Below, piece after piece: positions 48,434 through 63,877 of a stretch of 64,000 nt of DNA. Position numbers and translations under genes: made by a program. This DNA comes from Obrimoposthia wandeli (taxonomy: Eukaryota), in contig CDROCS010002469.1 in NCBI GenBank assembly GCA_977020255.1, forward strand, positions 62,001 to 126,000. The letters run 5' to 3'. How positions within the stretch are numbered: position 1 is the stretch's first letter; each line of letters starts with the position of its first letter. The notes beneath the pieces are model-generated. The model ran no database searches and was not told the DNA's origin. It saw nothing but the letters and a program-made list of their open reading frames with translations.

Positions 48434-48678
48434 ACACTTCAGTGTGAAGTTACAATGTAAATAATTTAGTGTCTAGTAAAGCCTGAGAGACCCACTTCAT
48501 ATCACTCCACTATCTCATCTCCCTCATCTCCTCCAGTAATAAGTCATCAGCATATAAATAGCTGACCGCCTCTCTAACTTTACAATTTGTGCACTTATTA
48601 TATTAATTTAAGCAGCATATTCAGATCATTCCGCGATGTTAGCTACTATCGTGTGTATTAGATTTAGCTCTACAACTC

Positions 48679-48692
48679 TTGATACAAATCAA
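48679..48692 (+). promoter_or_regulatory. FNR/Anr box upstream of uspA copy 1
   Basis: TTGAT-ACAA-ATCAA, a perfect consensus match. Confidence 0.75.
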
Positions 48693-48830
48693 AAGTATTT
48701 TCTCACACTTAGTCTATAGTAAAAATCAACTATATTAACAAATATAGTTGCGCTTTTTAGTGCTTATGGGCATTCGAATATTTTAATATTGCGCCCTAAT
48801 GCTATTAAAATCTAATCTGAGGAGACTAGT

Positions 48831-49280
48831 ATGAAAAAGCTCTTATATATAGTAGGAATCGATGGTAGTGAGTGGTCGATTCGAGCGACTCAAAGAGCTG
48901 TCAGTATCGCTAAAGATACTGGAGCTTGTGTTAAATTAGTATATGTAATGAATTTTCAATCAAGTTATCAATCTGAAATAGTTGCATATGGTTATTCTAT
49001 GCCTGCATTCGACGCCAAAGAAAAAGAGAAACAAGAAAAGCAAGTCCAAAAAAATGATATAGCCCCGTTAATCGATAAATATAGCGATGAAGTTGAATTA
49101 AGTAGCGAGTTTATTTGGGGAGATCCAGTTGAAATTCTGCTTGAACAAGCGAAAGAAAAGCACGCCAATATGCTGTTTTTGGGCCGTAGAGGTAGATCTA
49201 GATTAACCGATTTACTGTTAGGTAGTACAGCTAACAAAGTAGCACACTGTGCAGGCATCCCAATAGTATTAGTGCCTTAA
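48831..49280 (+). CDS. uspA: Universal stress protein (Usp), copy 1
   Basis: IVGIDGSEWS, WGDP and GRRGRS..TDLLLGSTANKV motifs; GGAG RBS. Confidence 0.92.
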   Translation: MKKLLYIVGIDGSEWSIRATQRAVSIAKDTGACVKLVYVMNFQSSYQSEIVAYGYSMPAFDAKEKEKQEKQVQKNDIAPLIDKYSDEVELSSEFIWGDPVEILLEQAKEKHANMLFLGRRGRSRLTDLLLGSTANKVAHCAGIPIVLVP

Positions 49281-49389
49281 TACGCTAATGTCAAGTTAGT
49301 ATATAAGCTTGTAATACACGCGTGATATGTAATATTTTTTTATGCAACCAATATTCTAAAATGGTTCATGATAGGGTACCTATATAGAC

Positions 49390-50040
49390 CAAAACCCTCG
49401 GTTTCTCGCGAAGCCGGTGGTTCAGGCTACCCGATGAAACAAAACTGAAGATATTATATTCACTCATACATATATTCATAACCTGCCAACACTCTCTGGG
49501 TTCGCTGTCAATAGCACCGATAGATAAGCTAATAGATCACTACATCACTTTAAAATCTTTAATGGTCGCATAGACTTTTCCTCGATTTCAATCCTCATGG
49601 GGCTGATAATCTGCTTAAATGTACTATGGTTCTTTTCCACTCTAATGCAGAAATATTTTACCTGTCGGTGCTTGAAATTCTTAGGCTTCGTTCCTTCCTC
49701 TTTTTAAATGTCCTGGTCTTACCTTATATAGGTTTTTCTATATTTATAATCAGCAGTATTTTCCTCGCCTTAAAGCCTTGTATAAGTTTTACTCACAAAA
49801 GCTTAGCCGGCTATACAATACCTCTAGGTAGTAAGTAACAATCAATAGTTCTCACATGCCGGTAATTACTGGCGATGAATAGCTATAGAATCTACGTATT
49901 TCTCTCAATGGCATTTATGCTAGCTCTAGATACAAATACGGATACCCTACTTACAATTCCAACGCACTTGTAAAATGATAACCTTGTATTGGATATAAAA
50001 ATGCTTAAATGGCTCACAGGGGCTACTAAAAATATCTGAT
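49390..50040 (-). pseudogene. Possible heavily decayed IS200/IS605-like element
   Basis: Broken minus-strand frames VRWNCK* and PAKLL*VKLIQGFKAR resemble IS200 TnpA (RWNCKYH; PPKxSVSxxxGxLKG). An end hairpin ACCACCGGCTTCGC lies near 49400-49425. Many stops. Confidence 0.3.
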
Positions 50041-50201
50041 ACTTTCATGAGAAACAGTTATTTACAATGGAGCTTAGATATTCACTAAAGCGACTGGACT
50101 TTCGGCAGATATAGTTTAAGTATTAAGTAAATTTATAATTAACTTACATTCTATGTTAGCGATAATAAAAATCACGCTAACAAACCATATAGAGGATTGT
50201 T

Positions 50202-53200
50202 ATGAAAGAAACTAGTTTACCTCCTTATATCGCTCCGAGTCTGGGCTTACCCGTCGCGAACGCCCCCTTTGTCTTCAATAATTCAAAACTTTCAGTACTA
50301 GCGTTGGAATGTGAGAATGCAAAGGTTCAAGCGCAATTAGATAGATATATAAATAAACCCAGTAATGGCGAGAAAGATCTTAGAACGTTCAGCTTACTTG
50401 GCAAAAGTTATATTTTTCTAGTGATGGCTGACATGCAGTTTATGGCTGCAAATAATCAAAATGAGATCCTAGGGAATGTAAAATACCCTGAATGCTCCTT
50501 TTGGATTCCTACTTTGGATACAAAGAATGATGAAATATCCGTATTTTTACCACTACTCTTACTAGATAGCGGTACGGCGATAGCTACTGGTAGAGAAGTA
50601 TTTGGCTTTGAGAAGCAACAATCGACTTTCGACTTTTTCAATGCAGACAACACATTAAATGTAAAAAACCCAAATTATCAAGTAAACCCATATTCGTTTA
50701 AAACCTTTGGCTCAGATGTCGAAGGTAAATACAATCCATTGCTAAAAGTGAGTAAAAGTACCTCTAAAGTCACTCAAACTGCCGAAGCAGCGCTTAATTT
50801 TGCTGCGGATAAATTGGCAAACTCTATAGAGCAGCATTTCCTAAAAGAAGGCTTAACTGTTGAAGGTACAGATAAAAAAGTCAGCCTATCTGAACTATTC
50901 TCGACAAATATTGAAGTGCCAGTGTCTTTCTTGAAACAATTCCCCTCTATTTCAGATATTAATCTTAGTAGTTTTCAAGAAGTAACCAGTGCAAAATTCA
51001 AACTATCGACTGTACACAACGCTGCACCTTACTTAATTCCTTTTAAACATCAAGTAACCATTTTCCCATTAGAAAGCCATCCTATTATTGATGAGTTTGG
51101 TATTAAAGCAGATAAACAAAGTGATGGCAGCTATATCACTCAGGTATCAGGGTTATGGCTGGATGTTGATTTCTCTTTAGAGCTGCCACCAAAGCCAATA
51201 ATACCCGTCAAGCCAGTGAAGAAAAAAATAGCAGTATTAGGCTCTGGAATGGGATCATTATCAACCGTATTTGGTTTAACCAGTGAGCCTGATTGGCAAG
51301 ATAAGTACGATATAACTATCTACCAAGAGGGATGGCGTATGGGTGGAAAGTGCGCTAGTAGCCGTGACCCAGAGATAGCTAATCGTATAGAAGAACACGG
51401 ATTGCATATTTTCTTTGGTTTTTATGATAACGCCATAAAAATGATGCGTGAAGCTTATGATGAAATAGGACGCCCGCCCGAAGCCCCTCTCGCTGATTTC
51501 GATGCGGCATTCAAACCGCATAGTTTTATCGCAGTACAAGAAATGATTAAGGGTAATTGGGTGACATGGCCAATATTTTTCCCACCAAATGACCAAGTGC
51601 CTGGTAGTGATGATAACTACGAACGGGACTCTCATGATAGCCCACTAGGCATGATATTGTGGCTATTAAATAATACTAAGCAACACTTAAAAACCCATCA
51701 GCAACTTCGCTCATTCACGGCTAAAAAACATCATGGGATTATTGATCGCTTAAAAAGTATCACTGGCCCTTTTAAAGCGGAACATCATCATGTTGATGAT
51801 ATCATTGCCTTGATTGATCACGTCTTACAAAAAGCTATAACGGCGACAGAAAAAGATGTGAAAAAAGTTGAATCTTTCTTTGGTGAATTAGGAAACCTGC
51901 TCGACATAGCACTTGACATATTTGAACAAATCTTTGGCCCAACCGCTGGAACACCTCAGAGTATCCAGCAAATAATTTTAGCTATGCGTTTTGGTTTCTT
52001 CGTCATCAAAGGCATGATTGCAGACAAAGTCATATTCAAATGGACTGTCATTGATCAGTATGATTTTAGGCAGTGGCTAAGAAAAAACGGAGCGCCGGAA
52101 GAAGTTGTTTGCTCGGCAATCGTCCGTGCATTCTATGATCTTTATCTGGCATTCCCTAAAGGTGATACCAGTGAATCACTTTGCGGTGGAAACATTTCAG
52201 CTGGCACTTTATTACATGCCTATTTCTTAAGTTGTGGCCAATACAAAGGTGCCATTTTCTGGAAGATGCAAGCAGGTATGGGCGAAACGGTCATCGTTCC
52301 ATTATATCAAGCACTAATAAAACGTGGCGTTAAAGTTGAGTTTTTTAATCGTGTTCAAAACTTAGCGCTCAGTGCAGATAAAACTGAAATCGAAGCAATA
52401 GAAATCGATGTACAAGCAACGATTAAACAGACTGAATTTAATTACCAACCCTTGATAGACGTAAAAGGATTACCCTGCTGGCCTAAAAACCCAAACTATT
52501 CGCAACTCGTACAAGGCTCACAACTGGACTACGAAAAAGTAGACCTTGAATCTCCATGGAGCCCTTGGAATACTGGTATTAAAAAGAGCCTAGTTAAGGG
52601 CACTGATTTTGACATAGTGGTTTTAGGTATTTCAGTGGGCGCATTACAGTATATAACCCCTGAGCTTATGGCCCAAAGTACTCGCTGGAAAGATATGGTC
52701 AGCAATGTACAAAGCTCTCAAACACAAGCTATGCAAGTTTGGCTAAAATCCAACCTTGAACAAACAGGTTGGAAATTAGCAAGTCCTGTGATGGACGGCT
52801 ACGCAGACCCTTTCAACACTTGGGCCGACATGAGTCAAACATTAGATGTAGAAACATGGCCAGAGAATCATTTGCCGAAATCTGTTGCCTATTTTTGTAA
52901 CAATTTAGACCAACCCAAAGAGATTCCGCCTTTCACTGATCATGGTTTTCCCATGAGAGAGCATCTTCGAGTACGTGAACATGCCACTAAATGGCTAAGT
53001 CAGAATACAGGACATATTTGGCCGTACATTAGCAATGATAAAGGTGGGTTAAAATGGGAGCAATTGGTTGATGTCAATGATGATTCAGCAAGTCCACGTG
53101 TCGGTGTTGACCGATTCGACAGCCAATACTGGCATGCCGCAATCAATCCAAGTGAGCGCTATGTATTATCAGTAGCTGATACCAATCAATATAGGTTAAA

Positions 53201-53360
53201 ATCGAATGATTCTAAATTTAGTAATCTATTTTTAGCAGGCGATTGGACTGATAACGGCTTCTTAAATATTGGTTGCGTTGAATCAACAGTAGTCTCAGGT
53301 TTTAAAGCGTCGAGAGCTATTGGAGGTTTCCCGAAAAGAATTTTCTATATCGATAAATGA
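50202..53360 (+). CDS. Fusion protein: acetoacetate-decarboxylase-fold domain + phytoene-desaturase/amine-oxidase-like FAD oxidoreductase (1052 aa)
   Basis: N-terminus: Y.EC.F.IP, LDSGTAIATGREVFGFEK (ADC GRE..G.PK). C-terminus: IAVLGSGMGSL, WRMGGK, IEEHGLHIFFGFYDN, NLFLAGDW...GCVESTVVSG. GAGG RBS. Confidence 0.8.
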   Translation: MKETSLPPYIAPSLGLPVANAPFVFNNSKLSVLALECENAKVQAQLDRYINKPSNGEKDLRTFSLLGKSYIFLVMADMQFMAANNQNEILGNVKYPECSFWIPTLDTKNDEISVFLPLLLLDSGTAIATGREVFGFEKQQSTFDFFNADNTLNVKNPNYQVNPYSFKTFGSDVEGKYNPLLKVSKSTSKVTQTAEAALNFAADKLANSIEQHFLKEGLTVEGTDKKVSLSELFSTNIEVPVSFLKQFPSISDINLSSFQEVTSAKFKLSTVHNAAPYLIPFKHQVTIFPLESHPIIDEFGIKADKQSDGSYITQVSGLWLDVDFSLELPPKPIIPVKPVKKKIAVLGSGMGSLSTVFGLTSEPDWQDKYDITIYQEGWRMGGKCASSRDPEIANRIEEHGLHIFFGFYDNAIKMMREAYDEIGRPPEAPLADFDAAFKPHSFIAVQEMIKGNWVTWPIFFPPNDQVPGSDDNYERDSHDSPLGMILWLLNNTKQHLKTHQQLRSFTAKKHHGIIDRLKSITGPFKAEHHHVDDIIALIDHVLQKAITATEKDVKKVESFFGELGNLLDIALDIFEQIFGPTAGTPQSIQQIILAMRFGFFVIKGMIADKVIFKWTVIDQYDFRQWLRKNGAPEEVVCSAIVRAFYDLYLAFPKGDTSESLCGGNISAGTLLHAYFLSCGQYKGAIFWKMQAGMGETVIVPLYQALIKRGVKVEFFNRVQNLALSADKTEIEAIEIDVQATIKQTEFNYQPLIDVKGLPCWPKNPNYSQLVQGSQLDYEKVDLESPWSPWNTGIKKSLVKGTDFDIVVLGISVGALQYITPELMAQSTRWKDMVSNVQSSQTQAMQVWLKSNLEQTGWKLASPVMDGYADPFNTWADMSQTLDVETWPENHLPKSVAYFCNNLDQPKEIPPFTDHGFPMREHLRVREHATKWLSQNTGHIWPYISNDKGGLKWEQLVDVNDDSASPRVGVDRFDSQYWHAAINPSERYVLSVADTNQYRLKSNDSKFSNLFLAGDWTDNGFLNIGCVESTVVSGFKASRAIGGFPKRIFYIDK

Positions 53361-53413
53361 ACCTACAGGCAGTCCTTTATAAATAAAAGTAGTAAACCTA
53401 AATAGACGAAATG

Positions 53414-53443
53414 AGAGGGTACAAGAGATAACTTGTACTCTCT
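53414..53443. terminator. Hairpin between the fusion gene and uspA copy 2
   Basis: AGAGGGTACAAG-agataa-CTTGTACTCTCT. Confidence 0.6.
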
Positions 53444-53629
53444 AACTAGTATTCATCCTGAAACGGGGTCGTCGCGAGAGCGACTCAATGATTCAAGATA
53501 CGTACTACTAGATATGGGCGTTTGGTTATTCCAAACAACTATATCTAGTAGTTAGTAGATTGTGTTAGTGAGGCGTTCGTAGTAGACATCCATTTCTGGA
53601 TGGACACTAACTACTTTACTATTAGCATA

Positions 53630-54079
53630 TCAAGGCACCAATACTATTGGAATACTTGCAAAGTGTGCAACTTTGTTAGCAGTACTACCCAACAGTAAAT
53701 CGGTTAATCTAGATCTACCTCTACGGCCCAAAAACAACATATTGGCGTGCTTTTCTTTTGCTTGTTCAAGTAGAACTTCTTCTGGATCCCCCCAAATAAG
53801 CTCACTACTCAATTCTACTTCATCGTTGTATTTGTCGATTAAGGGTGCTATATGGTTTTCTTGGGCTTGCTTTTCCTGCTTCTCTTTTTCTTTGGCATCA
53901 AACACTGGCATAGAATAACCGGATGCAACGCTCATTAGTTGATAATTCGAGTGAAAACTCATCACATACACCAATCTAACACAGGCACCAGTATCTTTAG
54001 CCATACAAACAGCCCTATGAGTCGCTCGAACCGACCACTCACTACCATCGATTCCTACTATATATAAGAGCTTCTTCAT
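53630..54079 (-). CDS. uspA: Universal stress protein (Usp), copy 2 (inverted paralog)
   Basis: 127/149 residues identical to copy 1 by hand count; GAGGGG RBS before ATG 54079. Confidence 0.92.
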   Translation of the reverse strand: MKKLLYIVGIDGSEWSVRATHRAVCMAKDTGACVRLVYVMSFHSNYQLMSVASGYSMPVFDAKEKEKQEKQAQENHIAPLIDKYNDEVELSSELIWGDPEEVLLEQAKEKHANMLFLGRRGRSRLTDLLLGSTANKVAHFASIPIVLVP

Positions 54080-54175
54080 ACTCACCCCCTCAGCATAGAC
54101 TTTAATAATAATAGATTAATAAATTAAAAATAATCGTATATCCGTAAATATTAATCACACTACCCTTTTGTTAAG

Positions 54176-54248
54176 ATAGTTGAGTCAACTATAGATCAAG
54201 CGCGCGTATCCACTTTTGATTTGTATCAATAATTTTAGTAGTCAACCT
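54176..54248. repeat. 73-bp promoter repeat A (contains FNR box 54216-54229)
   Basis: Three mismatches vs 54422-54494. Contains TTGATTTGTATCAA and the palindrome ATAGTTGA-g-TCAACTAT. Confidence 0.9.
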
Positions 54249-54400
54249 CATTGCTGCCCGGTTAAAAAGTGTAAGCTCTCTAACTCATTGATTTGTGGCT
54301 TTCTAGCATAGTTAATTGGGATTTTTAAGTGAAATAACACTTGTGGTTAACGTAAAATCAATGAGTTAAAGAACAACAAAAATTAAACCGGACACTAATG
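54249..54400. mobile_element. MITE-like element, copy 2 (152 bp)
   Basis: TIRs CATTGCTGCCCGGTTAA / reverse complement of the right end CATTAGTGTCCGGTTTAA (13/16 match). Same internal 14-bp IR as 2535-2685. Confidence 0.8.
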
Positions 54401-54421
54401 AGTCCCTTGGTTAGTTTGAAA

Positions 54422-54494
54422 ATAGTTGAGTTAACTATAGATCAAGCGCGCGTATCCACTTTTGATTTGCATCAATAATTTTAATAGTCAACCT
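54422..54494. repeat. 73-bp promoter repeat A' (contains FNR box 54462-54475)
   Basis: Direct repeat of 54176-54248; TTGATTTGCATCAA. Confidence 0.9.
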
Positions 54495-54714
54495 ATGGTT
54501 ATGTTGCCTGATTTGAAGAGCTTATTGTTACACACTTCCTAATTCAACGCAACTGCGGATTGAGCTGATTTTTTTTATATTTAAGAAATACCAAGGACCA
54601 TCACTGGAAGCACAAGCGCGTTTATCATAGCTATCGAGTAAGATTCTTGGACCGTTAACAGCCCCTGAAAAGACTAATACATGCTGATTAATGGATTTTA
54701 TACATGATTAATTA

Positions 54715-54890
54715 TCTGATAGTAGGCGTTCTCGTTTATTTAGTGGCAATGATTATTTTTAACCTGAAAGGTGGGCGGCAAAGGCTGATTTATTCCTGCA
54801 GAGCGGATGATCTAATCACTTGGTAGTATTATTGAAGGGCGCAGTAAGCCGTTCTTAGCGTATATCAGCCTTAATAACGAGCAACTAGGG
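54715..54890 (+). pseudogene. RAYT-like (HUH Y1) transposase relic A
   Basis: Fragments SDSRRSRLFSGND (54715-54753) and GSIIEGRSKPFLAYISLNN (54822-54878) resemble WSD..V..RW..LF.G and GRFWEGRFKS...MAYVDLNP of the large RAYT-like family, as recalled. Confidence 0.45.
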
Positions 54891-54902
54891 TCGCCATTGT
54901 TG

Positions 54903-55529
54903 TTAAGTGATTGCATACTGAAGTTCCCGCATGTGTTTGATAGTGTGTAAACATGAAATTGAAGCATGTATGCCATTTGGATCATACAAAATTGGCCGCA
55001 TACCTGCTTCTTTTGCAGCTGTAATACCTACCGGGCTATCTTCAACTACTGCGCATTCATGAGGTTTAAAACCCATTTCCTTGGCTGCATGCAAAAATAT
55101 ACCAGGATCAGGTTTCCAAGAAGCAATTTCATACGAACTAAATATTTTTCCATTAAAGTACTCTAACAGCCCAGAGACAGTGAGAGCCTTATTAATTTTT
55201 TCCAGAGGACCGCTAGATGCAACACATTTTGGTAGTACTATTTTTTCCAGCGCCGCTGCCACTCCTTCACACGGTTCTAGTTCTTTCTCAAACAACTCAT
55301 CTACTAGCGTTCGATAAGATAAAACGAAATTCTCTTTTAATCTGATGTTATGTTCTGATTCTATAACTTGAAGGATGGAGGCTAATTTTCCACCTCGAAA
55401 CCGTTCCATCATCTCTAGTGCGGATGATGCTATCCCATAATCTTTGAGCTTTATTTCTAGCCCGAGATTACAAAGGTACTCGCTATCGACTAAAGTTCCG
55501 TCACAGTCGAATATGATGCACTTGATCAT
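54903..55529 (-). CDS. HAD-IA family hydrolase (YieH-like)
   Basis: IIFDCDGTLVDSE, VASSG, WKPDPG and VVEDSPVG motifs. The stop codon lies in ACTTAAC, a perfect attC inverse core. Confidence 0.92.
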   Translation of the reverse strand: MIKCIIFDCDGTLVDSEYLCNLGLEIKLKDYGIASSALEMMERFRGGKLASILQVIESEHNIRLKENFVLSYRTLVDELFEKELEPCEGVAAALEKIVLPKCVASSGPLEKINKALTVSGLLEYFNGKIFSSYEIASWKPDPGIFLHAAKEMGFKPHECAVVEDSPVGITAAKEAGMRPILYDPNGIHASISCLHTIKHMRELQYAIT

Positions 55530-55538
55530 GGTGTAGCA

Positions 55539-55629
55539 GGCTCCTACTTAAGCGAAAAATAGAGTGGATTATGTATTGAACCAAGTAACCCATTAACTGC
55601 ATGTTGTCCGTTTGAAGTTTTAGTTAATC
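55539..55629 (-). other. Degenerate attC-like site downstream of GNAT 55624-56157
   Basis: GATTAAC-TAAAA-CTT(C)AAAC...GCTTAAG-TAGGA-GCC. The L boxes pair with one extrahelical base; the R' GTT is eroded. Confidence 0.55.
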
Positions 55630-56157
55630 CTTTATTTGCAATAGGCACATATCATTTTCCCATACATAGAGCAAATCGTTCACTTTATTACTGCTACCAG
55701 ACTGTTGCCATAAGTTGGTTTCTTGATGCTCGGCACCCATTCGATGGTAAAAACGGCGAGCACTTAGATTTCCCTCTAAGACTTCAAGATATATGCCCTT
55801 ATGATCAAATAGCTGATCTGCCCATTTTGCAATTAAATGCATTAACTGTTTGCCGACACCTTTACCTTGAGCCGTTTTTGAAACATGTAAATTATCGACA
55901 AATGTACCCCATTTAGGACTTTCGTTGCCAAAAGCACAAATAAAACCATATATCTCATTATTCTCAGTCGCAATTATTATATGTTGATTATGTCTGGGCG
56001 AGGATAAACGCTTAGTCCAAGAACTTTGTCGCTCCTCCCTTACATCATTATCCAAAAAGTCGTCACTAAATATCCCCCTATAAGCCTCACGCCAACTCTG
56101 GGCATGTATCTTTGCTAAGTTTTCTAAATCATTAAAATCAGCAGGCCTGTAATGCAT
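55624..56157 (-). CDS. GNAT family acetyltransferase
   Basis: HAQSWREAYRG, FVDNLHV..TAQGKGVGKQL and N.SARRFYHRMG motifs. Confidence 0.9.
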   Translation of the reverse strand: MHYRPADFNDLENLAKIHAQSWREAYRGIFSDDFLDNDVREERQSSWTKRLSSPRHNQHIIIATENNEIYGFICAFGNESPKWGTFVDNLHVSKTAQGKGVGKQLMHLIAKWADQLFDHKGIYLEVLEGNLSARRFYHRMGAEHQETNLWQQSGSSNKVNDLLYVWENDMCLLQIKD

Positions 56158-56179
56158 ATATTAAAAAACTCCAATGACC

Positions 56180-56276
56180 ACTTACTCCCTGTCAAACAGC
56201 GATAAATATTGACTAAATCTACCAGGAGCGATTGCCACCCAGCTGTTTAACGCTCGTTCGAGTTGCTTTGTTGGTA
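56180..56276 (-). other. Degenerate attC-like site at the 3' end of GNAT 56219-56797
   Basis: TACCAAC-AAAGCA-ACTCGAAC(G)AGCGTTAAA...TTTATCGCTGTTTGAC-AGGGA-GTAAGT. Long imperfect palindrome; R' equals GTTAAGT minus one T. Confidence 0.6.
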
Positions 56277-56797
56277 TAAACCTCAATTTTATATACCTCT
56301 ACCTGACTCAACAAACCATGGCGATTGAGTTTTCTAATATCACGAATCTTCACCATACCAATTTTCGTCATAACTTTACCAGAAGCTGGGTTTGATGATA
56401 GATGCTCGGCAATAATGAGCGATATTGAGAACTTTTCAAATGCTTTATGCAATAGAGCTGATGCAGCTTGCGTACAATAACCTTTACCCCAAAACTCATG
56501 GCCAATCCAGTATCCTAGTTCAGCTTTATCACCTGAAATAGATACGAGGCTAACAGTCCCCACCAATTGAGAACAAGGTTTTAAAGTAACTGCGTAGGAA
56601 ACTCCTGTTCGATTCAACCAACAACTTTTTTGAGTAGATATCCACTCTTCAGCAATATCCTCACTATATGGATGTGGTATATTCAAGGTTGTTTCTGCAA
56701 TTCTTATATCACCAGCCAATCTCGTAACCATCGGTGAATCTGCCAATATGAATGGACGTAAAATTAGGTTTTCAGTTTCAATAATTGGTTGTTCCAT
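56219..56797 (-). CDS. RimJ/RimL-type GNAT acetyltransferase
   Basis: IETENLILRPF, IPHPY, AELGYWIG..FWGKGY..QA and NPASGKVM.KIGM motifs. Confidence 0.9.
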   Translation of the reverse strand: MEQPIIETENLILRPFILADSPMVTRLAGDIRIAETTLNIPHPYSEDIAEEWISTQKSCWLNRTGVSYAVTLKPCSQLVGTVSLVSISGDKAELGYWIGHEFWGKGYCTQAASALLHKAFEKFSISLIIAEHLSSNPASGKVMTKIGMVKIRDIRKLNRHGLLSQVEVYKIEVYTNKATRTSVKQLGGNRSW

Positions 56798-57252
56798 ATT
56801 TCACACTCCCATGCTGAATTATTCATGCATCTGGATATAATGAATCCCTCTAAATGTTAATCTCAAATTCGGGAGACCAACACGAGCCATAATATAGATT
56901 AGAACATATTGAGAAAATTGATCACGCAAAACATTAACATAATCTTTATTGATTTAGATACTCATAAAGTCAGCACTCTAATTGCTTAGAGTAAAAATAC
57001 TAACAGCGCAGAAACCTTTCATTTAGGTAAAATTAGCACCGACATACAATCGTTCATTTAGTTTGCCCGCAAACTTCAATCAAAATATTCAAAATTGCGT
57101 TTATGACTCTATCAACAATTAATAAAATCAGCCACCCTCTAAAACGTAGTTGTTACAGCCATTACTTGAGAAGTTATGTTACCTATAATCAAAGTTAACA
57201 ATGCTTTGCGATAATTCCTGCATGGTTATTCTGTTAATACATCAAGTATCAG

Positions 57253-57488
57253 ATGCCGCGAGCCAGACGGCTACAGAAAGTAATCAGTGTTCAATTGACA
57301 GAACCACGCACATACACTGAGGGTATACACCACGTTACAATAGATAAGGCAGGCTAATACATGAAAACTGACGGTCCACGCACACCAGCATGATAACCGA
57401 CGACATTGCCCGCTTCATATCTTTGCTGACTCGCCTTAAATCAAAAAAGATACTTGAAACGTGGGTAGGTGTTTACACGTTGTCGTAA
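57253..57488 (+). pseudogene. RAYT-like (HUH Y1) transposase relic B
   Basis: MPRARRLQKVIS...IHHVTIDKAG* then DDIARFISLL...TWVGVY. These resemble MPRPR..QVSL, NHxHVVLxVD, DISWFMR.L and FWEGRF, with internal deletions. Confidence 0.5.
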
Positions 57489-57517
57489 ACAGAAAATCTA
57501 ATATCAATTTCAGTATC

Positions 57518-57611
57518 TGAAGCAGCTAAAACAGAGCGAGGAAGGCATAATATGTAAACTTTCCAGGATGCGAACTTCATACTATTATGCTGCTGTTACA
57601 GCTTGTTAGCC
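57518..57611 (-). other. Weak degenerate attC-like site after the GFA gene
   Basis: GGCTAAC-AAGCT-GTAACAGCAGC...GCTGCTTCAG; the R' box is not recognisable. Confidence 0.35.
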
Positions 57612-57934
57612 CCATCAAAGTAGCGAACGGGCACATCCGTTATTATATTGCGGACAAGACCAAAGTTTACCGCGACTCGAGGATCAGAATGACCTTCTTT
57701 GGTTCGATAATGAGTCACACACCCACAGTTTTTGCAACGAATAAAATCTAGTTCATTGTCACCCCACGAATATGAATCAGTACCAAAACTTCCAATACTA
57801 ATTTTTGGCTCGTCGAACTGGTAGTAGCCCCATAAGCTCATGTAACGGCTACATATAGAACAATTACATTCGGTTATTTGCTTAGGTTTCTCCACTTCAA
57901 TAATAATATTACTACAATGACATGCTACTTTCAT
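57596..57934 (-). CDS. GFA/CENP-V family (glutathione-dependent formaldehyde-activating-like) protein
   Basis: CHC, CNCSIC and F.RC..CG..THY Zn motifs. Confidence 0.88.
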   Translation of the reverse strand: MKVACHCSNIIIEVEKPKQITECNCSICSRYMSLWGYYQFDEPKISIGSFGTDSYSWGDNELDFIRCKNCGCVTHYRTKEGHSDPRVAVNFGLVRNIITDVPVRYFDGANKL

Positions 57935-58456
57935 GGCGCCCTCTTAGTCTGCTGCACAAGCAACTTTACTGCTCATGCACGTTTGTAACAATAACCGGGT
58001 TTCTCGGCATTTACTTTTCTATTCACATATACCGATGATATTGCAACAGTTTCCATTTCATTGCCAGTGTAAACAAACACAGTTTCAGATCGTATTTTAA
58101 ACAACACTAATTATTTACACCGTCAATTAAGATACTGGTTATCATGCAAACATTTGAACTTTACAGCTAGCATAAAAAATCGATTTAAATCTATAATCAC
58201 AACAGTAATGACAAACAGATTCGATAGATGCTTCTAAGACACTTTAAACGTTAACGAGTTGTAAACCGTAAGATCAAAGCTAAACCTTGTAATAAAGCCA
58301 AAAGCAGTGGTTATTATTAGCCAGGTAAATATATTTTATATATAAAATTTGTTCACGCGAATCAACTCTTACCAACTAAAATTTGAGTGGATATATAACA
58401 ATACCGCTACCTTTCTTATAATAGTGTATTAACCACTCAGTGAGTTTGGCCTATAT

Positions 58457-58900
58457 TTATAAACGCTGCCACCAAGGAATTTTTTTACACATTGGAACTT
58501 TTTGACTAAATATTTCAAATAAGCGCTCCATATCTTTATAGTGCTCAATTTTAAAGCCTTTATCTTCACTCATGATAACAAACACTGCTACTTTTTTAGC
58601 GCGACGCTTGAACAGCAATATTTTAAAATCATGCATTGCATATACCTGCTCCGATGTGGCTGAACTGAGCGTAACCTTTTCTCCATCGATCGTCAGTTTT
58701 CGGCTACAAATTTCAGCGGCATCTTTAAAAACACTTCTACCACGGTAAATTAATACGATAGCAAACACAGCTACCGCCCACGGCCATTCTAGCCATTGTT
58801 CTGCCACTGCCACCCATAATATAATGGCAAAGCTAAAGGCCATTTCAAAATGTTTAAAAAGATAACTTCTTAAAGTATTACCTGTTGATTGATACTGCAT
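58457..58900 (-). CDS. Hypothetical 2-TM membrane protein with a C-terminal soluble domain
   Basis: GAGG RBS; two TM helices at about residues 18-53. Confidence 0.7.
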   Translation of the reverse strand: MQYQSTGNTLRSYLFKHFEMAFSFAIILWVAVAEQWLEWPWAVAVFAIVLIYRGRSVFKDAAEICSRKLTIDGEKVTLSSATSEQVYAMHDFKILLFKRRAKKVAVFVIMSEDKGFKIEHYKDMERLFEIFSQKVPMCKKIPWWQRL

Positions 58901-59090
58901 TCAAACCTCTCTGTTGGCCTATTAAAACCGATTCTTATTATGATAGCTACGTTAAAAAGGCACTGCTAAAAGCCTAATATTATAAATGATAAAGTGACTT
59001 GACTTATGATCCAGTTCGCAATTATTTACAGGCCAAAAATAAATCGACCCCACTATCCCATTAACTTCTAGCCTCCCCTCGTTAACACGT

Positions 59091-60038
59091 TCAGAGTAAA
59101 TGGTCACAATGTGGGCAACGCTTATAGTGTTTCATCAACTTACTATGATAGTTTTTAATCAGCATTTCTGCTTCCTGATCGCTAATCCCTAACTCTAATT
59201 GCAGCACTTTAAGCTCCATTTTTTCTGCATTTGTAAAGGCTCCATCATCATAAGCATTGGCAACTTTTGATGCATATAAAGATCTATTACGTTTTAGTTG
59301 CGCCGAAAAGCCGGAGGCTAAAATACCCGCGGGCAGTGCAACCATCCCCATGCCAATAATGGTAATTAACCCACCGAAGATTTTTCCTATCGGTGTGATG
59401 GGTGTTACATCACCATAGCCTACTGTTGTTAATGTTGCTGTTGCCCACCACATGGCAGCGGGAATACTACCAAAAGCATCCGGCTGAACCTCATGTTCTA
59501 ACAAGTAAATACCGCTAGAAGCAAGTACTAACACAATGGTTAGAATAAAGAATGCAGCAAAAAACGAGCTAGACTCATCTTTCAATACTTTAAGCAAAGT
59601 ATTCATTGCATTGGAATAACGGGTTAATTTGAAAATACGCAAAATGCGGAACACACGTAAAAAACGCAGATCTATCACTATAAAGAATGTTAAATAGAAA
59701 GGTAAAATAGCGATTAGATCAATCATCGCGGGGATAGATACCATATAGCGCAAACGCCCTTTAAAATCATCACTATAAAGCTGCTCTTTTAATTCTGGGC
59801 AAGACCACACACGAGCAATATACTCAAGGCTAAATATACTGATAGAGAAAATTTCAAAATAGTAAAATTCTGTTTTATAAGCGGCTGATAATGCATTCAC
59901 TGATTCTAAAATAATAGCTAGGACATTGGCCATTATTAACAATATTAATGAAATATCCACCCAACGTGCAAATGATCCTGCATTGGAGTTAAACTCGATG
60001 ACTTTGGATATTGTTGTTCTAATTTGTTGACTGTTCAT
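59091..60038 (-). CDS. Voltage-gated-type K+ channel / ion transporter
   Basis: S4-like LRFLRVFRILRIFKLTRY, pore filter TLTTVGYGD and C-terminal CPHC. Confidence 0.9.
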   Translation of the reverse strand: MNSQQIRTTISKVIEFNSNAGSFARWVDISLILLIMANVLAIILESVNALSAAYKTEFYYFEIFSISIFSLEYIARVWSCPELKEQLYSDDFKGRLRYMVSIPAMIDLIAILPFYLTFFIVIDLRFLRVFRILRIFKLTRYSNAMNTLLKVLKDESSSFFAAFFILTIVLVLASSGIYLLEHEVQPDAFGSIPAAMWWATATLTTVGYGDVTPITPIGKIFGGLITIIGMGMVALPAGILASGFSAQLKRNRSLYASKVANAYDDGAFTNAEKMELKVLQLELGISDQEAEMLIKNYHSKLMKHYKRCPHCDHLL

Positions 60039-60361
60039 CTTTTCCCTCCTGCTATGAGCCTCAATTATAAGCCAATTTATTTAGATACTGTTAGTTTTCA
60101 AAGAGAAACGGATTAACTACCCCTTATTTTAGCGATAACAAATACTCTATAAATGGCGCTTTGGGATACTAGAAAATGGCTTACAAAAGAATATTTTTAT
60201 AGGTAAAGCAAGCAATGAGTAAGATACAAATTCTACACACAACAGAGCTTAGGGAAGAGGTATTCTTTTAGACTATTAGATTATCGTTAAAGGCGAAATT
60301 AGGTAGCAGCTAGTTTTTATTCTCACTGCTACATAATCGTTATTGCGATACACTTTTGTGG

Positions 60362-61855
60362 TTATCTGATCACAAAAGGGTTACTCATTGGTTCTGAAGA
60401 AGTATTAATCCAAGTGGTTTTAGTACGAATATAATCTTGAATTCCCTGTAAACCTGCCTCACGACCGTAACCGGATTGGTTTATACCGCCAAAAGGAGCG
60501 ATAGGTGAAGTAACACGATAAGTATTTACCCAGCATATCCCCGCTTTAATCTTACTAGAAACACGATGTGCGCGTGCAATGTTCTGTGTAAACACACCTG
60601 AACCCAACCCGTAAATACTATCATTAGCCATAGCGAGTGCCTCTTCTTCAGTATCAAAGGCAACAATAGACATGATAGGACCAAACATTTCTTGCTTAAG
60701 TGTTGCTATATCGTGGTTAGGGCATTCAACCATAGTCGGCTCAAAATAGTTTTGTGAGCCACACTGTGGTGCTCGCTTGCCACCAAAACGAATAGTAGCA
60801 CCTTGCTCAATCGCTGTAGCTAAAGTGCGCTCAATGCATTCTACTTGAGCAAGTGTACACAACGGGCCTATATGCGTGGCACTATCTTGGGGATCACCCA
60901 TCACAATGTTTTTTGCTTTCTCGGCAATCATTGCCGTGAGCTTCTCCAGTATCGGGCGCTGAATAAACGCACGCGAGCCCGCTACACAAGATTGGCCAGA
61001 GGCGCCAAAATTACCCGCAATCAAACCATTCGCCGCACTTTCTAGATCGGCATCTTCAAACACGATAATAGGCGATTTTCCGCCTAATTCAAGTGAGGTG
61101 ACTGCAAAATTTTCTGCCGTGTTACGTACTACATGTTTAGCTGTTTCTGGACCACCGGTAAAAGCTAAGCGATCAATATCGGGGTGAGAGGTTAGCGGTA
61201 TAGCACAGTTTTGTGCATCGCCAGTAATAATAGAGACGACACCATCCGGGATACCCGCTTGCTGAATAAGCTTACCTAATTCAAACATTGGTGTGGGTGC
61301 TAATTCAGATGCTTTTAATACCACTGTGCAACCTGCAGCTAAGGCAGGCCCAAGCTTTGATGCCGTCAAAAACATCTGCGCATTCCAAGGTACAACCGCT
61401 GCAACAACACCGATAGGCACTGGTGTGGTAAATACATGCATATCAGGCTTATCAATCGGTAACGTTGCTCCTTCCACTTTATCTGCAAGCCCTGCATAGT
61501 AGCGATAGTAACTCGCAACATAGCGCGATTGACTCACGGTTTCAGCCGCTAGCTTACCACTATCAGTGGTCTCAATTGTGCCTAATGTTAATGCATTTTC
61601 TTCGATCAAATCAGCCAATTTATAAAGTAAAGCACCTCGCTCTGTCGCATTCATCTGCGCCCATGGCCCTTGATTTAAGTTACGTCTTGCCGCTTCAACG
61701 GCGCGATTGACATCTGATTTACTGGCACATGCAAAAGTGGCCCACTGCTCGCCATTAGCTGGGCTTTCACTGCCCATCACTTGATTTTCGCTACCTTCAA
61801 CCCATTGCCCATCAATCAATAATTGAAAGTGCGGTAATTTTTTATTGGTCATCAT
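60362..61855 (-). CDS. tgnC: Aldehyde dehydrogenase, TgnC-like
   Basis: PWN, FTGGPET, LELGGKSP, GQSCVAG and EMFGP motifs; operonic with tgnB/tgnA-like genes. Confidence 0.75.
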   Translation of the reverse strand: MMTNKKLPHFQLLIDGQWVEGSENQVMGSESPANGEQWATFACASKSDVNRAVEAARRNLNQGPWAQMNATERGALLYKLADLIEENALTLGTIETTDSGKLAAETVSQSRYVASYYRYYAGLADKVEGATLPIDKPDMHVFTTPVPIGVVAAVVPWNAQMFLTASKLGPALAAGCTVVLKASELAPTPMFELGKLIQQAGIPDGVVSIITGDAQNCAIPLTSHPDIDRLAFTGGPETAKHVVRNTAENFAVTSLELGGKSPIIVFEDADLESAANGLIAGNFGASGQSCVAGSRAFIQRPILEKLTAMIAEKAKNIVMGDPQDSATHIGPLCTLAQVECIERTLATAIEQGATIRFGGKRAPQCGSQNYFEPTMVECPNHDIATLKQEMFGPIMSIVAFDTEEEALAMANDSIYGLGSGVFTQNIARAHRVSSKIKAGICWVNTYRVTSPIAPFGGINQSGYGREAGLQGIQDYIRTKTTWINTSSEPMSNPFVIR

Positions 61856-61925
61856 TGGACTCTCTTGAGTGTTACTTCTAAATAAGTATTTTCTAGATAA
61901 ATACTTATTTTATTTAATTTACACG

Positions 61926-62960
61926 CTAGTTAAAAGCAGGCATCACTTCATCTATAAAACGTTTCAATGAGGTTTCTTTTTGCTCACGGCTCATACCTGA
62001 GTCACTCCAATAGGAAAATTCGTCATAGCCTAAATCCTGATAGTGTTTCAAGCGATCAATAATCTGCTTTGATGTTCCTATCATCAGATCTTTGCGGATT
62101 TTATCTGCACTATAAAATGGATGTGCGCTTATTTCTTCTGCACTCAATTGTTTGATTAAACCTTGATCTACCTCGCGCTCATTTTTAAACCAAGCGCCAA
62201 AGTAGCAGTAAAATGTATTTAACTGTTGAGCGGCTAAATCCAATTCCGCTTCATCTTTACCTATATAAGTATGTTGCAGAATCATAATTTTTGGTCGTTT
62301 TTTATGCGTATCGCAAGCTTGATTAAACTTATCAATCAAACTTTCTACTTCTTCTAACCCCTGCCAAAGGGGTGTTACTTGCACGTTACAATCGTTTTCA
62401 ACCGCAAATTCGTGACTATTGATATCCCGTGCAGCCACCCAAATTGGCGGTCCTTTCACAGTAGTCGGTTTAGGTGAGGAGCTTGTTTTAGGAAACTGAT
62501 AATACTTACTATCTTGCGCGTAATTACCCGCCCATAAGCCTTTAATGGCAGGGATCACTTCACGCAAACGCTCTCCCGCTTCCCATGCATCCATGCCACC
62601 TTGCATCATGCGTTCATATTCAAATGAATAAGCACCGCGTGCCACACCAAGCTCTAACCTGCCCTGTGTAAGTATATCGGTCATTGCCGCTTCACCGGCT
62701 AATTTGATAGGATTCCAAAAAGGCGCGACTATGGTGCCTGTTCCCAATCGCACATTTTTAGTACGATGCGCTAAATCTATCAAATTTAAAAAAGGATTAG
62801 GAGCAATAGTAAAATTCATACCGTGATGCTCGCCAGTCCAAATAGTGCACATCCCACCCTTATCGGCCATATCACATAGTGATAAAAACTCTTGATAAAG
62901 GTCGTTCTGAGTGTGTTCGTTGTCTACCCGCTCCATATGAGCAAAAAGAGAAAATTTCAT
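61926..62960 (-). CDS. tgnB: Luciferase-like flavin-dependent monooxygenase, TgnB-like (trigonelline/homarine oxygenase)
   Basis: MKFSLF.HMER, WTGEHHGMNFTIAPNPF, GAYSFEYERM and YFGAWFKNERE closely resemble Acinetobacter TgnB as recalled. Confidence 0.8.
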   Translation of the reverse strand: MKFSLFAHMERVDNEHTQNDLYQEFLSLCDMADKGGMCTIWTGEHHGMNFTIAPNPFLNLIDLAHRTKNVRLGTGTIVAPFWNPIKLAGEAAMTDILTQGRLELGVARGAYSFEYERMMQGGMDAWEAGERLREVIPAIKGLWAGNYAQDSKYYQFPKTSSSPKPTTVKGPPIWVAARDINSHEFAVENDCNVQVTPLWQGLEEVESLIDKFNQACDTHKKRPKIMILQHTYIGKDEAELDLAAQQLNTFYCYFGAWFKNEREVDQGLIKQLSAEEISAHPFYSADKIRKDLMIGTSKQIIDRLKHYQDLGYDEFSYWSDSGMSREQKETSLKRFIDEVMPAFN

Positions 62961-62971
62961 ACGTTTATGCC

Positions 62972-63877
62972 TCAGTGAATATCACCCGATTGGTTGTCAC
63001 CGACATATACGCGGAACACCCCATTATTTTTTTCCGTCACGTAGCGCTTCATCATGCTTTTAATATCACTTGTCGCATAATCCAAACCGGATAGTGCTTC
63101 AATGCTGACAAACTCACCTAATTGCGCTGTGTCTTCAGTACTTGCAAGCGCGTGGTAAAAAGTACTGAAACGTTTGTCTTGTAAGTTCTCATAGATAGAA
63201 AAAACTGAACCTAACTCCACTTCTAAACCTTTACCGCTTAAGTATTGGCGCACTGCCTCTAAAGAACCCTGACCTACTTTGCTTTGCACTTGCGGTAAGC
63301 TAAAACCTGCATCAGTTTGAGTGAGTAGCACTTTATCTTGATATTCGATAACAGCACCCACTATCCCCGCTTGCTTTTGGCTCAATTCCTCAGCGCGATG
63401 TTCCATGCCCAAACTAAAATAGCCACCTTTAGCGTAACCCAAGCCTAGTTGATCGCTAGTGCTAAAGACTCTCACTTCGCCGATCAAAACAATATGATCA
63501 CCCGCATCTACATTGTTATAAGTTGAGCAAGAAAAATGCGCCACCGCACCTTCAATCAGCGGAATACCATGCTCATCACTATGCCAAGGCACATTCGCAA
63601 AGCGATCGCCTTTACCACCGGCAAAAGTGTTTGATATCTGTTGTTGATCTTCAGCGAGAATATTGACTGCAAAGTATTTGCAGTTATTAAAAATATCAAA
63701 GCTAGATAAATTTTTAGCCGGGCAGATTAACAGTAGCGGCGGATCAACCGAAACCGAAGTAAATGAGTTTGCAGTAAAACCAACCTTCTCACCCGTCTCA
63801 CTTACTGCTGTCACTACTGTGACGCCCGTCATGAACGATCCGAAAGCATTACGTAGTTCTCTAATATCAATAGCCAT
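62972..63877 (-). CDS. tgnA: Flavin reductase, TgnA-like, with a C-terminal extension
   Basis: LRNAFGSFMTGVTVVT, GFTANSFTSVS.DPPL and AGDHIVLIGEV motifs. AGGAG RBS; the ATG overlaps the upstream TGA (TGATG). Confidence 0.8.
   Translation of the reverse strand: MAIDIRELRNAFGSFMTGVTVVTAVSETGEKVGFTANSFTSVSVDPPLLLICPAKNLSSFDIFNNCKYFAVNILAEDQQQISNTFAGGKGDRFANVPWHSDEHGIPLIEGAVAHFSCSTYNNVDAGDHIVLIGEVRVFSTSDQLGLGYAKGGYFSLGMEHRAEELSQKQAGIVGAVIEYQDKVLLTQTDAGFSLPQVQSKVGQGSLEAVRQYLSGKGLEVELGSVFSIYENLQDKRFSTFYHALASTEDTAQLGEFVSIEALSGLDYATSDIKSMMKRYVTEKNNGVFRVYVGDNQSGDIH

What the first reader, a model, noticed from the sequence alone, without database searches (positions are those of the whole stretch)
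50202..53360. Stand-alone ADC-fold / phytoene-desaturase-like flavoenzyme fusion of unknown chemistry
Seen: one 1052-aa ORF joins two modules. The ~330-aa N-terminal module has the acetoacetate-decarboxylase signature (LD...IA.GREVFGFEK). The ~720-aa C-terminal FAD module has motifs (GSGMGS, WRMGGK, EEHGLHIFFGFYDN, LAGDW...GCVES) like PDS/ZDS/HpnE desaturases. Established: ADC-fold enzymes use the Lys of this motif for Schiff-base chemistry. That Lys is kept here, while the adjacent second Lys of classical ADC is Gln. Seen: no prenyltransferase, crtB or hpnCD genes lie nearby, so this is not a standard carotenoid or hopanoid locus. Inference: a self-contained two-step enzyme (aldol/decarboxylation plus FAD redox or isomerisation) acting on a lipid or small carbonyl, probably horizontally acquired. 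It is the best candidate here for an undescribed enzyme system.
Basis: partly seen in the sequence, partly recalled or inferred. Interest (0 to 1): 0.75.

Follow-up and report, generated by a model that had tools for sequence, protein, structure and literature searches.

The report
Orphan ADC-like/desaturase-like flavoenzyme fusion
This intact 1052-residue gene joins an acetoacetate-decarboxylase-fold domain to a phytoene-desaturase-like flavoprotein; the pair is widespread in bacteria but unstudied, usually sits beside giant sensor kinases and often beside terpenoid enzymes, and here it stands alone in a strain-specific block of an Oceanospirillaceae chromosome.

Summary

- **N-terminal domain:** its model has the acetoacetate-decarboxylase (ADC) fold (Z 19.1; unrelated folds reach 4.7 at most). 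K138 aligns with the Schiff-base lysine of ADC.
- **C-terminal domain:** its model matches rice phytoene desaturase best (Z 27.6; next 22.4) and keeps the FAD motifs. It scores far below the PDS, ZDS and HpnE family cut-offs.
- **Not a one-off:** at least 890 relatives exist across many phyla. They are fused in either order, or encoded as adjacent genes, so the two modules work together.
- **No known function:** no member has a name beyond "NAD(P)-binding protein", a solved structure, or a paper that I could find.
- **New context:** the pair usually sits beside a Ser/Thr-kinase/AAA_16/GAF/histidine-kinase giant or a 7TMR-DISM sensor, with diguanylate cyclases. In 19 of 82 loci it sits beside terpenoid enzymes.
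- **This copy:** it has none of these partners. It lies in a block of at least 15.5 kb that is missing at this site in two close relatives.

Most likely it is a two-step enzyme acting on a long hydrophobic, probably isoprenoid, substrate: a flavin step plus lysine-iminium chemistry. The reaction itself is unknown.

The parts
50202..53360 (+). Intact 1052-aa ORF (stop codon included): ADC-like domain fused to a PDS-like FAD domain
50202..51203 (+). N-terminal ADC-fold domain (aa 1-334)
   Evidence: AF2 pLDDT 85. The top 24 Foldseek hits are all ADC superfamily. VIA Z 16.7-19.1 for all 12 ADC-superfamily entries; next 4.7.
50589..50615 (+). GREVFGFEK motif. K138 (50613-50615) aligns with the Schiff-base Lys115 of C. 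acetobutylicum ADC.
   Evidence: K is kept in 56 of 61 aligned ADC-like domains from other loci.
51183..51224 (+). Short linker (about aa 328-341) between the domains. In Marinomonas sp. MED121 this spot holds a stop codon, 4 nt and a new start.
51225..53357 (+). C-terminal FAD domain (aa 342-1052), phytoene-desaturase-like
   Evidence: AF2 pLDDT 88.9. 5mog scores Foldseek 2e-17 and VIA Z 27.6, 448 aligned, rmsd 3.0. Pfam NAD_binding_8 and the Amino_oxidase tail.
51240..51257 (+). Dinucleotide-binding GSGMGS (GxGxxG/S) of the FAD Rossmann fold
51609..52193 (+). Helical insert of about 195 aa (aa ~470-664). About 270 of the domain's 718 residues, this insert among them, are left unaligned with PDS. 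Lower model confidence.
   Evidence: Only weak, non-significant similarity to helical-bundle and apolipoprotein chains.
53238..53246 (+). C-terminal GDW flavin-binding motif (LFLAGDW)
48831..49280 (+). usp paralogue 1 (flank, not part of the enzyme); a perfect FNR-type box lies at 48679-48692
53630..54085 (-). usp paralogue 2, an inverted copy of paralogue 1 (arms 82-86% alike); FNR-type boxes at 54216-54229 and 54462-54475
48434..64000 (.). Block that is not syntenic with two close relatives. Synteny ends exactly at the stop of the tusE/dsrC-like gene (48433).

Best explanation
The gene encodes a fused member of a widespread, uncharacterised two-module enzyme: an ADC-fold domain with a catalytic lysine, plus a phytoene-desaturase-like flavoprotein.

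Shown: both folds, retention of the Schiff-base lysine (K138) and of the FAD-binding motifs, obligate genomic coupling of the two modules, and frequent coupling of the pair to terpenoid enzymes, hydrophobic-compound importers and sensor kinases or nucleotide cyclases.

Inferred: the flavin domain dehydrogenates, oxidises or isomerises a long hydrophobic substrate, most likely an isoprenoid. This step creates or exposes a carbonyl or conjugated system. The ADC-like domain then binds the carbonyl as an iminium on K138 and carries out a C-C or C-H step, such as decarboxylation, hydration with retro-aldol cleavage, or aldol-dehydration. In relatives, the product, or removal of the substrate, probably feeds the neighbouring sensor. 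The copy in this window has lost that partner or never had it, and sits in a strain-specific block.
For: - **Folds:** (ADC fold, Z 19.1 against 4.7 for unrelated folds; PDS best at Z 27.6, next 22.4).
- **Catalytic lysine:** K138 aligns to K115 of 3bh2. It is invariant in 32 homologues and kept in 56 of 61 further domains; the exceptions are second repeats or extra copies.
- **FAD motifs:** invariant.
- **Coupling of the modules:** ADC-FAD fusions, reversed FAD-ADC fusions (L044, L045, L078, L083), adjacent genes upstream or downstream, and at least 5 independent changes of the fused state on the tree.
- **Isoprenoid link:** polyprenyl synthetase in 14 loci, squalene/phytoene synthase between the ADC and FAD genes in Microcoleus, Pyr4-like terpene cyclase between them in Chitinophagaceae, and a CrtC-like hydratase in Catenovulum.
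- **Import of hydrophobic compounds:** FadL in 4 loci and a TonB receptor in 7.
- **Signalling link:** a Pkinase-AAA_16 giant in 39 of 82 loci, 7TMR-DISM in 20 loci, REC-GGDEF in 8.
Against: - No reaction, substrate or cofactor has been measured for any member.
- The window copy and its nearest clade (Marinomonas, Deefgea) have no terpenoid gene beside them, so the isoprenoid link is carried over from relatives only about 35% identical.
- The order of the two steps is a guess.
- Amine and amino-acid oxidases also match the flavin domain well (Z 20-22).
- No full-length model was made, so it is not known whether the two active sites face each other.
- The Arg that binds the carboxylate in true ADC has no conserved counterpart that I could see. 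That comparison rests on my memory of the ADC sequence and was not tested.
Confidence: 0.55

Rival explanations
1. Amine or amino-acid oxidase plus keto-acid processing. The flavin domain oxidises a C-N bond, for example of an amino acid or a beta-amino acid. The ADC-like domain then decarboxylates, cyclises or condenses the resulting keto acid, as MppR and Sbi00515 do.
For: L-amino-acid oxidases, NicA2, MAO and LSD1 are strong structural matches. Pfam sees an Amino_oxidase tail. Characterised ADC-superfamily enzymes act on small keto acids, as the entry titles show.
Against: PDS stands 5 Z units above every amine oxidase and aligns more residues. Operon partners are terpenoid enzymes, FadL and TonB receptors, not amino-acid genes.
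Confidence: 0.15
2. A sensory accessory protein rather than a metabolic enzyme. The flavoprotein reports redox state, or binds a ligand, and controls the neighbouring kinase or 7TMR-DISM sensor directly.
For: Direct adjacency to large sensor kinases and cyclases across many phyla.
Against: The catalytic lysine and flavin motifs are strictly conserved. Biosynthetic terpenoid genes sit inside the same operons. Copies without any sensor nearby, such as this one, stay intact.
Confidence: 0.1
3. An ordinary carotenoid or hopanoid pathway enzyme, that is, an orthologue of PDS, ZDS, CrtI or HpnE.
For: The best NCBIfam hits are HpnE, ZDS and PDS, and PDS is the best structural match.
Against: Scores of 38.7, 31.4 and 26.5 bits against cut-offs of 283, 622 and 569. 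No PDB sequence match beyond the Rossmann start. About 270 of the domain's 718 residues stay unaligned with PDS. The ADC partner is obligate. No crtB or hpnCD gene lies nearby.
Confidence: 0.03
4. A decaying or artefactual fusion, for example two genes joined by an assembly or frame error.
For: The closest relative has the two modules as separate genes 4 nt apart.
Against: At least 17 independent genomes among the fetched loci carry the same ADC-FAD fusion. The window protein keeps every invariant residue and aligns end to end. The linker is in frame.
Confidence: 0.02

Closest known systems
Acetoacetate decarboxylase-like superfamily (true ADCs 3c8w, 3bgt, 3bh2; Sbi00515 aldolase-dehydratase; MppR; Swit_4259)
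   Same: The same double-barrel fold over about 220 residues (Z 16.7-19.1). The GRExxGxxK motif is shared, with the lysine in register with the Schiff-base lysine.
   Different: - Only 11-21% identity, and Pfam ADC scores below its cut-off (17.9 against 29.8 bits).
- About 80 extra residues, including a long helix (aa 192-216).
- The second lysine of the PKK motif is Gln here.
- The domain always comes with a flavoprotein partner.
- The family has its own invariant FLKQF motif (K245, Q246).
Plant/cyanobacterial-type phytoene desaturase (rice PDS, 5mog) and its kin ZDS and HpnE
   Same: Best structural match (448 aligned residues, rmsd 3.0, Z 27.6). The N-terminal GxGxxG with RxGGK and the C-terminal GD flavin motifs are shared.
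   Different: - 13-17% identity.
- Fails all three equivalog models by a factor of 7 to 20 in bits.
- About 270 of the domain's 718 residues stay unaligned with PDS; they include a helical insert of about 195 residues.
- An invariant Gln (Q375) lies just before the RxGGK motif, about where many FAD Rossmann folds carry an acidic residue. That comparison is from memory and was not tested.
- Not found in carotenoid or hopanoid gene clusters of the usual kind.
Flavin amine oxidase family (L-amino-acid oxidase, MAO, NicA2, protoporphyrinogen oxidase, P. acnes fatty-acid isomerase)
   Same: The same two-domain flavoprotein fold (Z 19-22).
   Different: Weaker matches than PDS. No sequence-level match outside the Rossmann region.

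Membership tests
ADC-like superfamily (fold level) | Double beta-barrel ADC fold | tested here: met
   Foldseek 8.5e-11 to 2e-7 for 24 ADC-superfamily chains. VIA Z 19.1, 221 of 250 residues aligned.
ADC-like superfamily (fold level) | Schiff-base lysine in the GRExxGxxK motif | tested here: met
   K138 aligns with the first K of PKK in 3c8w, 3bgt and 3bh2. It is invariant in A2.
True acetoacetate decarboxylase (Pfam PF06314, NCBIfam PRK02265) | Score above the curated cut-off | tested here: not met
   Pfam 17.9 bits against 29.8. NCBIfam 12.8 against 150.
True acetoacetate decarboxylase (Pfam PF06314, NCBIfam PRK02265) | Second lysine next to the Schiff-base lysine, and a carboxylate-binding Arg near the N-terminus | tested here: inconclusive
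   The second Lys is Gln139 here, and that column varies across the family. The Arg position could not be mapped with the tools. Only a comparison from memory suggests it is absent.
Phytoene desaturase / zeta-carotene desaturase / HpnE equivalogs | Score above the NCBIfam equivalog cut-off | tested here: not met
   HpnE 38.7 against 283; ZDS 31.4 against 622; PDS 26.5 against 569.
Phytoene desaturase / zeta-carotene desaturase / HpnE equivalogs | Genomic company of phytoene or squalene synthase genes | tested here: not met
   None within about 10 kb on either side of this gene. Present in only one of 82 related loci (Microcoleus).
FAD-dependent amine-oxidase/PDS-type flavoprotein superfamily | Rossmann GxGxxG with RxGGK, a C-terminal GD motif, and the two-domain fold | tested here: met
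   The motifs are invariant. The fold matches across residues 4-708 of the domain. Flavin binding itself was not measured.
Known anti-phage defence systems (considered because of the kinase/STAND neighbours) | Match to a PADLOC model | tested here: not met
   No hit for the fusion protein, the split ADC-like protein or the unknown 260-aa protein. The kinases match only through their generic kinase domain.

The most novel reading that the evidence does not exclude
The ADC-like/PDS-like pair is the synthase, or the degrading enzyme, of an undescribed terpenoid-derived carbonyl signal or chromophore, for example an apocarotenoid-like aldehyde or an isoprenoid ketone. Dedicated receptors read this signal: Ser/Thr-kinase/STAND/GAF hybrid histidine kinases in one lineage and 7TMR-DISM receptors in another. 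The output is c-di-GMP or cyclic-nucleotide synthesis. That would be a new lipid-signalling pathway spread over many bacterial phyla. The window carries a detached copy of the enzyme.
Probability: 0.2. Interest if true: 0.85.

Novelty: new variant of a known kind. Interest (0 to 1): 0.62.

Why it matters
Both domains belong to well-known superfamilies. Their obligate pairing has no described chemistry, no solved structure and no informative name, although at least 890 relatives were found, among them copies in Shewanella, Pseudoalteromonas, Janthinobacterium, Sorangium and cyanobacteria.

The survey turns an isolated odd ORF into a testable system in three ways:
- It gives a probable substrate class: isoprenoids or other long hydrophobic compounds.
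- It gives a catalytic residue to mutate: K138.
- It gives a probable physiological read-out: the neighbouring kinase, 7TMR-DISM sensor and diguanylate-cyclase genes in culturable strains.

If the product is a signal, it would also assign a ligand source to two large classes of orphan bacterial receptors.

Tried and rejected
- **PDB sequence searches.** A profile of the whole protein found nothing significant. A profile of the N-domain found only the 28-residue motif region of three ADCs, at E 0.06-0.5.
- **Literature.** Five searches found no paper on the family: the ADC-like superfamily; ADC with phytoene desaturase, 7TMR-DISM or AAA_16; COG3349; multi-kinase or HstK; Shewanella with ADC.
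- **Defence system.** This idea was rejected.
- **Fe-S cluster.** The JGI name implies one, but only two cysteines are at least 90% conserved and there is no cluster motif.
- **Upstream region.** Rfam found no RNA family at 48400-54700. The 920-nt upstream region has no convincing ORF. Promoter and terminator scans were at background level. The FNR-type boxes sit in front of the two usp genes only, not in front of this gene.
- **Iterated HMM search for ADC partners.** The third round leaked into the Rossmann start of the flavin domain. I discarded those short hits.
- **Not run.** I did not run the large representative protein search, because relatives were plentiful.
- **Base composition.** It gives no sign of foreign origin: 0.38-0.40 GC in the gene against 0.34-0.42 across the window.
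Full report

An ATG-started ORF of 1052 codons runs from 50202 to 53360 on the + strand.
- GREVFGFEKQ at 50589-50618
- KIAVLGSGMGS
- GWRMGGK and EEHGLHIFFGFYDN
- LFLAGDWTDNGFLNIGCVES

Pfam alone is weak on this protein. NAD_binding_8 matches at 3e-8 and the last 70 residues of Amino_oxidase at 1e-4. ADC scores 17.9 bits, under its cut-off of 29.8. NCBIfam ranks HpnE, ZDS and PDS first, but at 38.7, 31.4 and 26.5 bits against cut-offs of 283, 622 and 569.

**2. The two folds**

I split the protein at residue 334/335, guided by an alignment of 34 full-length homologues. I then aligned each half with relatives (A2, A3) and modelled each half.

*N-terminal half.* The model has pLDDT 85. Its top 24 Foldseek hits in the PDB are all members of the acetoacetate-decarboxylase-like superfamily: true ADCs, Sbi00515, MppR, Swit_4259 and the Methanoculleus protein, at E 8.5e-11 to 2e-7. 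With VIA-align, all 12 such entries score Z 16.7-19.1. The best is 3c8w, with 221 residues aligned at rmsd 3.1. The next fold scores 4.7.

A profile of the N-domain finds three true ADCs as its only near-significant PDB sequence matches. That alignment puts K138 on the first lysine of their PKK motif, which is residue 115 in chain 3bh2. From established knowledge, K115 is the Schiff-base lysine of the C. acetobutylicum enzyme.

The fold is there.

*C-terminal half.* The model has pLDDT 88.9 and pTM 0.92. Rice phytoene desaturase 5mog is the best match by Foldseek, at 2e-17, with amine oxidases near 1e-13. An exhaustive VIA search agrees: Z 27.6, 448 aligned, rmsd 3.0, with the next match at 22.4.

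The flavin motifs are invariant across the family. About 270 of the 718 residues have no counterpart in PDS. They include a helical insert at about aa 470-664 of the whole protein. A sequence profile of the whole protein finds no PDB entry at a significant level. The family is therefore far from anything solved.

**3. A large family in which the two modules always travel together**

The word search returned 890 proteins at E <= 0.001 among the 8000 candidates scored. Two size classes stand out: about 1020-1100 aa carrying ADC plus NAD_binding_8, and about 700-770 aa with the flavin part only. The only names on record are "NAD(P)-binding protein", the JGI/COG phrase [quoted passage not shown], and occasionally "acetoacetate decarboxylase".

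The closest flavin-only relative is Marinomonas sp. MED121, 64% identical. It has a 327-aa ADC-like gene that ends 4 nt before the flavin gene. At the junction the two genomes differ by a stop codon and a 14-nt indel.

I fetched 80 loci from one genome per species and searched them with HMMs of both halves. This gave:
- about 17 ADC-FAD fusions
- reversed FAD-ADC fusions in Rhodobacteraceae, Rhizobiaceae and Solirubrobacterales (L044, L045, L078, L083; Pfam)
- about 22 loci with the ADC gene directly upstream
- several loci with it downstream
- about 10 loci with it a few genes away
- 3 confirmed loci (L026, L035, L058) with a more canonical ADC gene upstream; L070 has a weaker hit of the same kind
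- about 20 loci, several on short contigs, where I found none

On a FastTree phylogeny of 93 flavin domains, the ADC-FAD state needs at least 5 changes and the reversed fusion at least 2. Repeated fusion in both orders is strong evidence that the two modules act together.

K138 is kept in 56 of 61 aligned ADC-like domains from these loci. The five exceptions are degenerate second repeats of tandem ADC-ADC proteins, or an extra copy. An acidic residue at position 97 (E or D in 54 of 60 aligned domains) and the FLKQF motif (K245, Q246) are also nearly invariant.

**4. What lies beside the pair elsewhere**

I clustered the flanking ORFs and named the clusters with Pfam. Three recurring layouts emerged.

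*(a) Kinase layout.* The pair sits with a protein carrying Pkinase and AAA_16, often followed by GAF, PAS, HisKA, HATPase_c and REC (1100-2400 aa). A REC-GGDEF gene frequently follows. The kinase is present in 39 of 82 loci and is usually directly adjacent. The taxa include Oceanospirillales, Neisseriales, Pseudomonas, Cyanobacteriota, Verrucomicrobiota, Myxococcota, Actinomycetota, Bacteroidota, Chloroflexota and Acidobacteriota. All of the window protein's nearest relatives have this layout.

*(b) 7TMR-DISM layout.* The order is ADC, FAD, TonB-dependent receptor, 7TMR-DISM hybrid histidine kinase, and sometimes REC-GGDEF. It occurs in Pseudoalteromonas, Catenovulum and Aliiglaciecola. In Shewanella and many Burkholderiales the fused gene instead lies next to a convergent 7TMR-DISM GGDEF or kinase gene. 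In Chitinophaga the neighbour is a 7TMR-DISM adenylate/guanylate cyclase.

*(c) Terpenoid layout.* The order is FAD, an unknown protein of about 260 aa, polyprenyl synthetase, sometimes a saccharopine-dehydrogenase-like gene, then ADC or ADC-ADC, with the kinase convergent. It is found in all 14 members of one well-supported clade.

Other terpenoid enzymes also occur inside these operons:
- a squalene/phytoene synthase between the ADC and FAD genes in Microcoleus
- a Pyr4-like transmembrane terpene cyclase between them in two Chitinophagaceae
- a CrtC-like hydratase in front of them in Catenovulum

In total, 19 of 82 loci carry a terpenoid enzyme within the cluster. FadL occurs in 4 loci and TonB receptors in 7. 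None of the enzyme proteins tested (the fusion protein, the split ADC-like protein and the unknown 260-aa protein) matches a known defence system.

**5. This copy and its setting**

The window comes from an Oceanospirillaceae bacterium. Its Lon protease is 96% identical to that of an Oceanospirillaceae MAG and 89% identical to that of an 'Osedax' symbiont Rs2.

In both relatives the gene order from Lon to the tusBCDE-like dsrEFH/dsrC genes is the same as in the window. Nucleotide similarity with the closer relative (86% over 11 kb) stops exactly at 48433, the end of the dsrC-like gene. The relatives' next genes have no counterpart in the rest of the window, up to 64000. Those genes are a NAD_binding_2 dehydrogenase, an AP_endonuc_2 protein, cheW and a gntR-type regulator.

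The fusion gene therefore lies in a strain-specific block of at least 15.5 kb. The database holds no orthologue above 68% identity, so the close relatives seem to lack the gene. Base composition is unremarkable. This fits acquisition or local rearrangement but does not prove horizontal transfer. The nearest homologue is from the same order.

Within the block the gene is bracketed by an inverted duplication of a usp gene with its promoter (arms 48781-49300 and 53610-54129, 82-86% alike). Perfect FNR-type boxes precede both usp genes but not the fusion gene.

No kinase giant, 7TMR-DISM gene, polyprenyl synthetase, FadL or TonB-receptor homologue of the kinds above occurs anywhere in the 64 kb. 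An earlier first-stage note (s1-241209) reports a 2225-aa kinase-like/STAND/GAF hybrid histidine kinase with a diguanylate cyclase on another piece of the same assembly. That could be the detached partner. I could not test it, and other notes on this assembly name several different organisms.

**6. How it most likely works**

Shown:
- both folds
- the catalytic lysine and the flavin motifs
- the obligate pairing of the two modules
- the company of terpenoid enzymes, hydrophobic-compound importers and sensors

Inferred: the PDS-like domain performs a flavin-dependent dehydrogenation, oxidation or isomerisation on a long hydrophobic substrate, probably an isoprenoid. The ADC-like domain uses K138 to form an iminium with a carbonyl on the same molecule, and carries out a decarboxylation, a hydration with retro-aldol cleavage, or an aldol-dehydration step. 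These are the chemistries known in this superfamily. In relatives the product, or the removal of the substrate, is probably what the adjacent receptor reads.

I put about 0.55 on this general scheme and much less on any specific reaction.

Rivals:
- an amine or amino-acid oxidase with keto-acid processing (0.15)
- a purely sensory flavoprotein (0.1)
- an ordinary PDS, ZDS or HpnE orthologue (0.03)
- an artefactual or decaying fusion (0.02)

**7. Novelty**

Each domain belongs to a known superfamily, so the finding is not categorically new. The fusion is also common, so this gene is not unique. The paired family is nevertheless undescribed in the papers and databases I could reach.

I rate it a new variant of known kinds, of above-average interest. 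The interest attaches to the family more than to this orphan copy.

**Limits**

- No expression data exist for this stretch.
- Gene calls in the fetched loci are my own greedy ORF calls, and may be wrong in detail in GC-rich genomes.
- The tree is a FastTree with local supports only.

Noticed in passing
window 48657-49300 and 53610-54251: Inverted duplication of a usp gene together with its promoter region (82-86% identity over about 520 nt, weaker further out). It brackets the fusion gene and its 920-nt upstream region. Perfect TTGAT-N4-ATCAA (FNR/ANR-type) boxes lie at 48679, 54216 and 54462, so both usp copies are probably oxygen-regulated.
   Followed up: partly
window 54173-54248 and 54419-54494: A 76-nt direct repeat (95% identical, 246 nt apart) upstream of the second usp gene. 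Each copy carries one FNR-type box.
   Followed up: no
window 48433/48434: Sharp end of synteny with two close Oceanospirillaceae relatives, right after the tusE/dsrC-like gene. Everything from here to the window end is absent at this site in the relatives: usp, the fusion gene, usp, a HAD hydrolase, two GNATs, a GFA-like gene, an ion channel, an aldehyde dehydrogenase and a luciferase-like monooxygenase.
   Followed up: partly
window 38920-41397 (-): The Lon ORF as listed is 825 aa. All close homologues are 807-809 aa and cover 98% of it, so the true start is probably about 16 codons downstream.
   Followed up: no
L052:14092-17061, L057:7359-9842, L071:14895-17369, L082:5688-7934: Proteins with two tandem ADC-like domains. 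The first keeps the GRExxGxxK lysine and the second has lost it, so it looks like a catalytic plus pseudo-catalytic pair.
   Followed up: partly
L063:4494-5276 and six relatives (alignment A4): A conserved protein of about 260 aa, with no Pfam or PADLOC match, always lies directly after the flavin gene and before the polyprenyl synthetase. Its N-terminal part is Arg/Pro-rich and poorly conserved; its C-terminal part of about 100 aa carries the conserved motif VPDxQPxGxYxGxIVD.
   Followed up: partly
L027, L030, L033, L041, L080, L076: Two or three tandem paralogues of the flavin gene, or a FAD-FAD fusion of 1388 aa. This recalls the sequential paralogous desaturases PDS and ZDS.
   Followed up: no
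L046:9998-13057: In a Bryobacteraceae MAG the flavin domain carries a C-terminal DUF2515 domain where other lineages carry the ADC-like domain.
   Followed up: no
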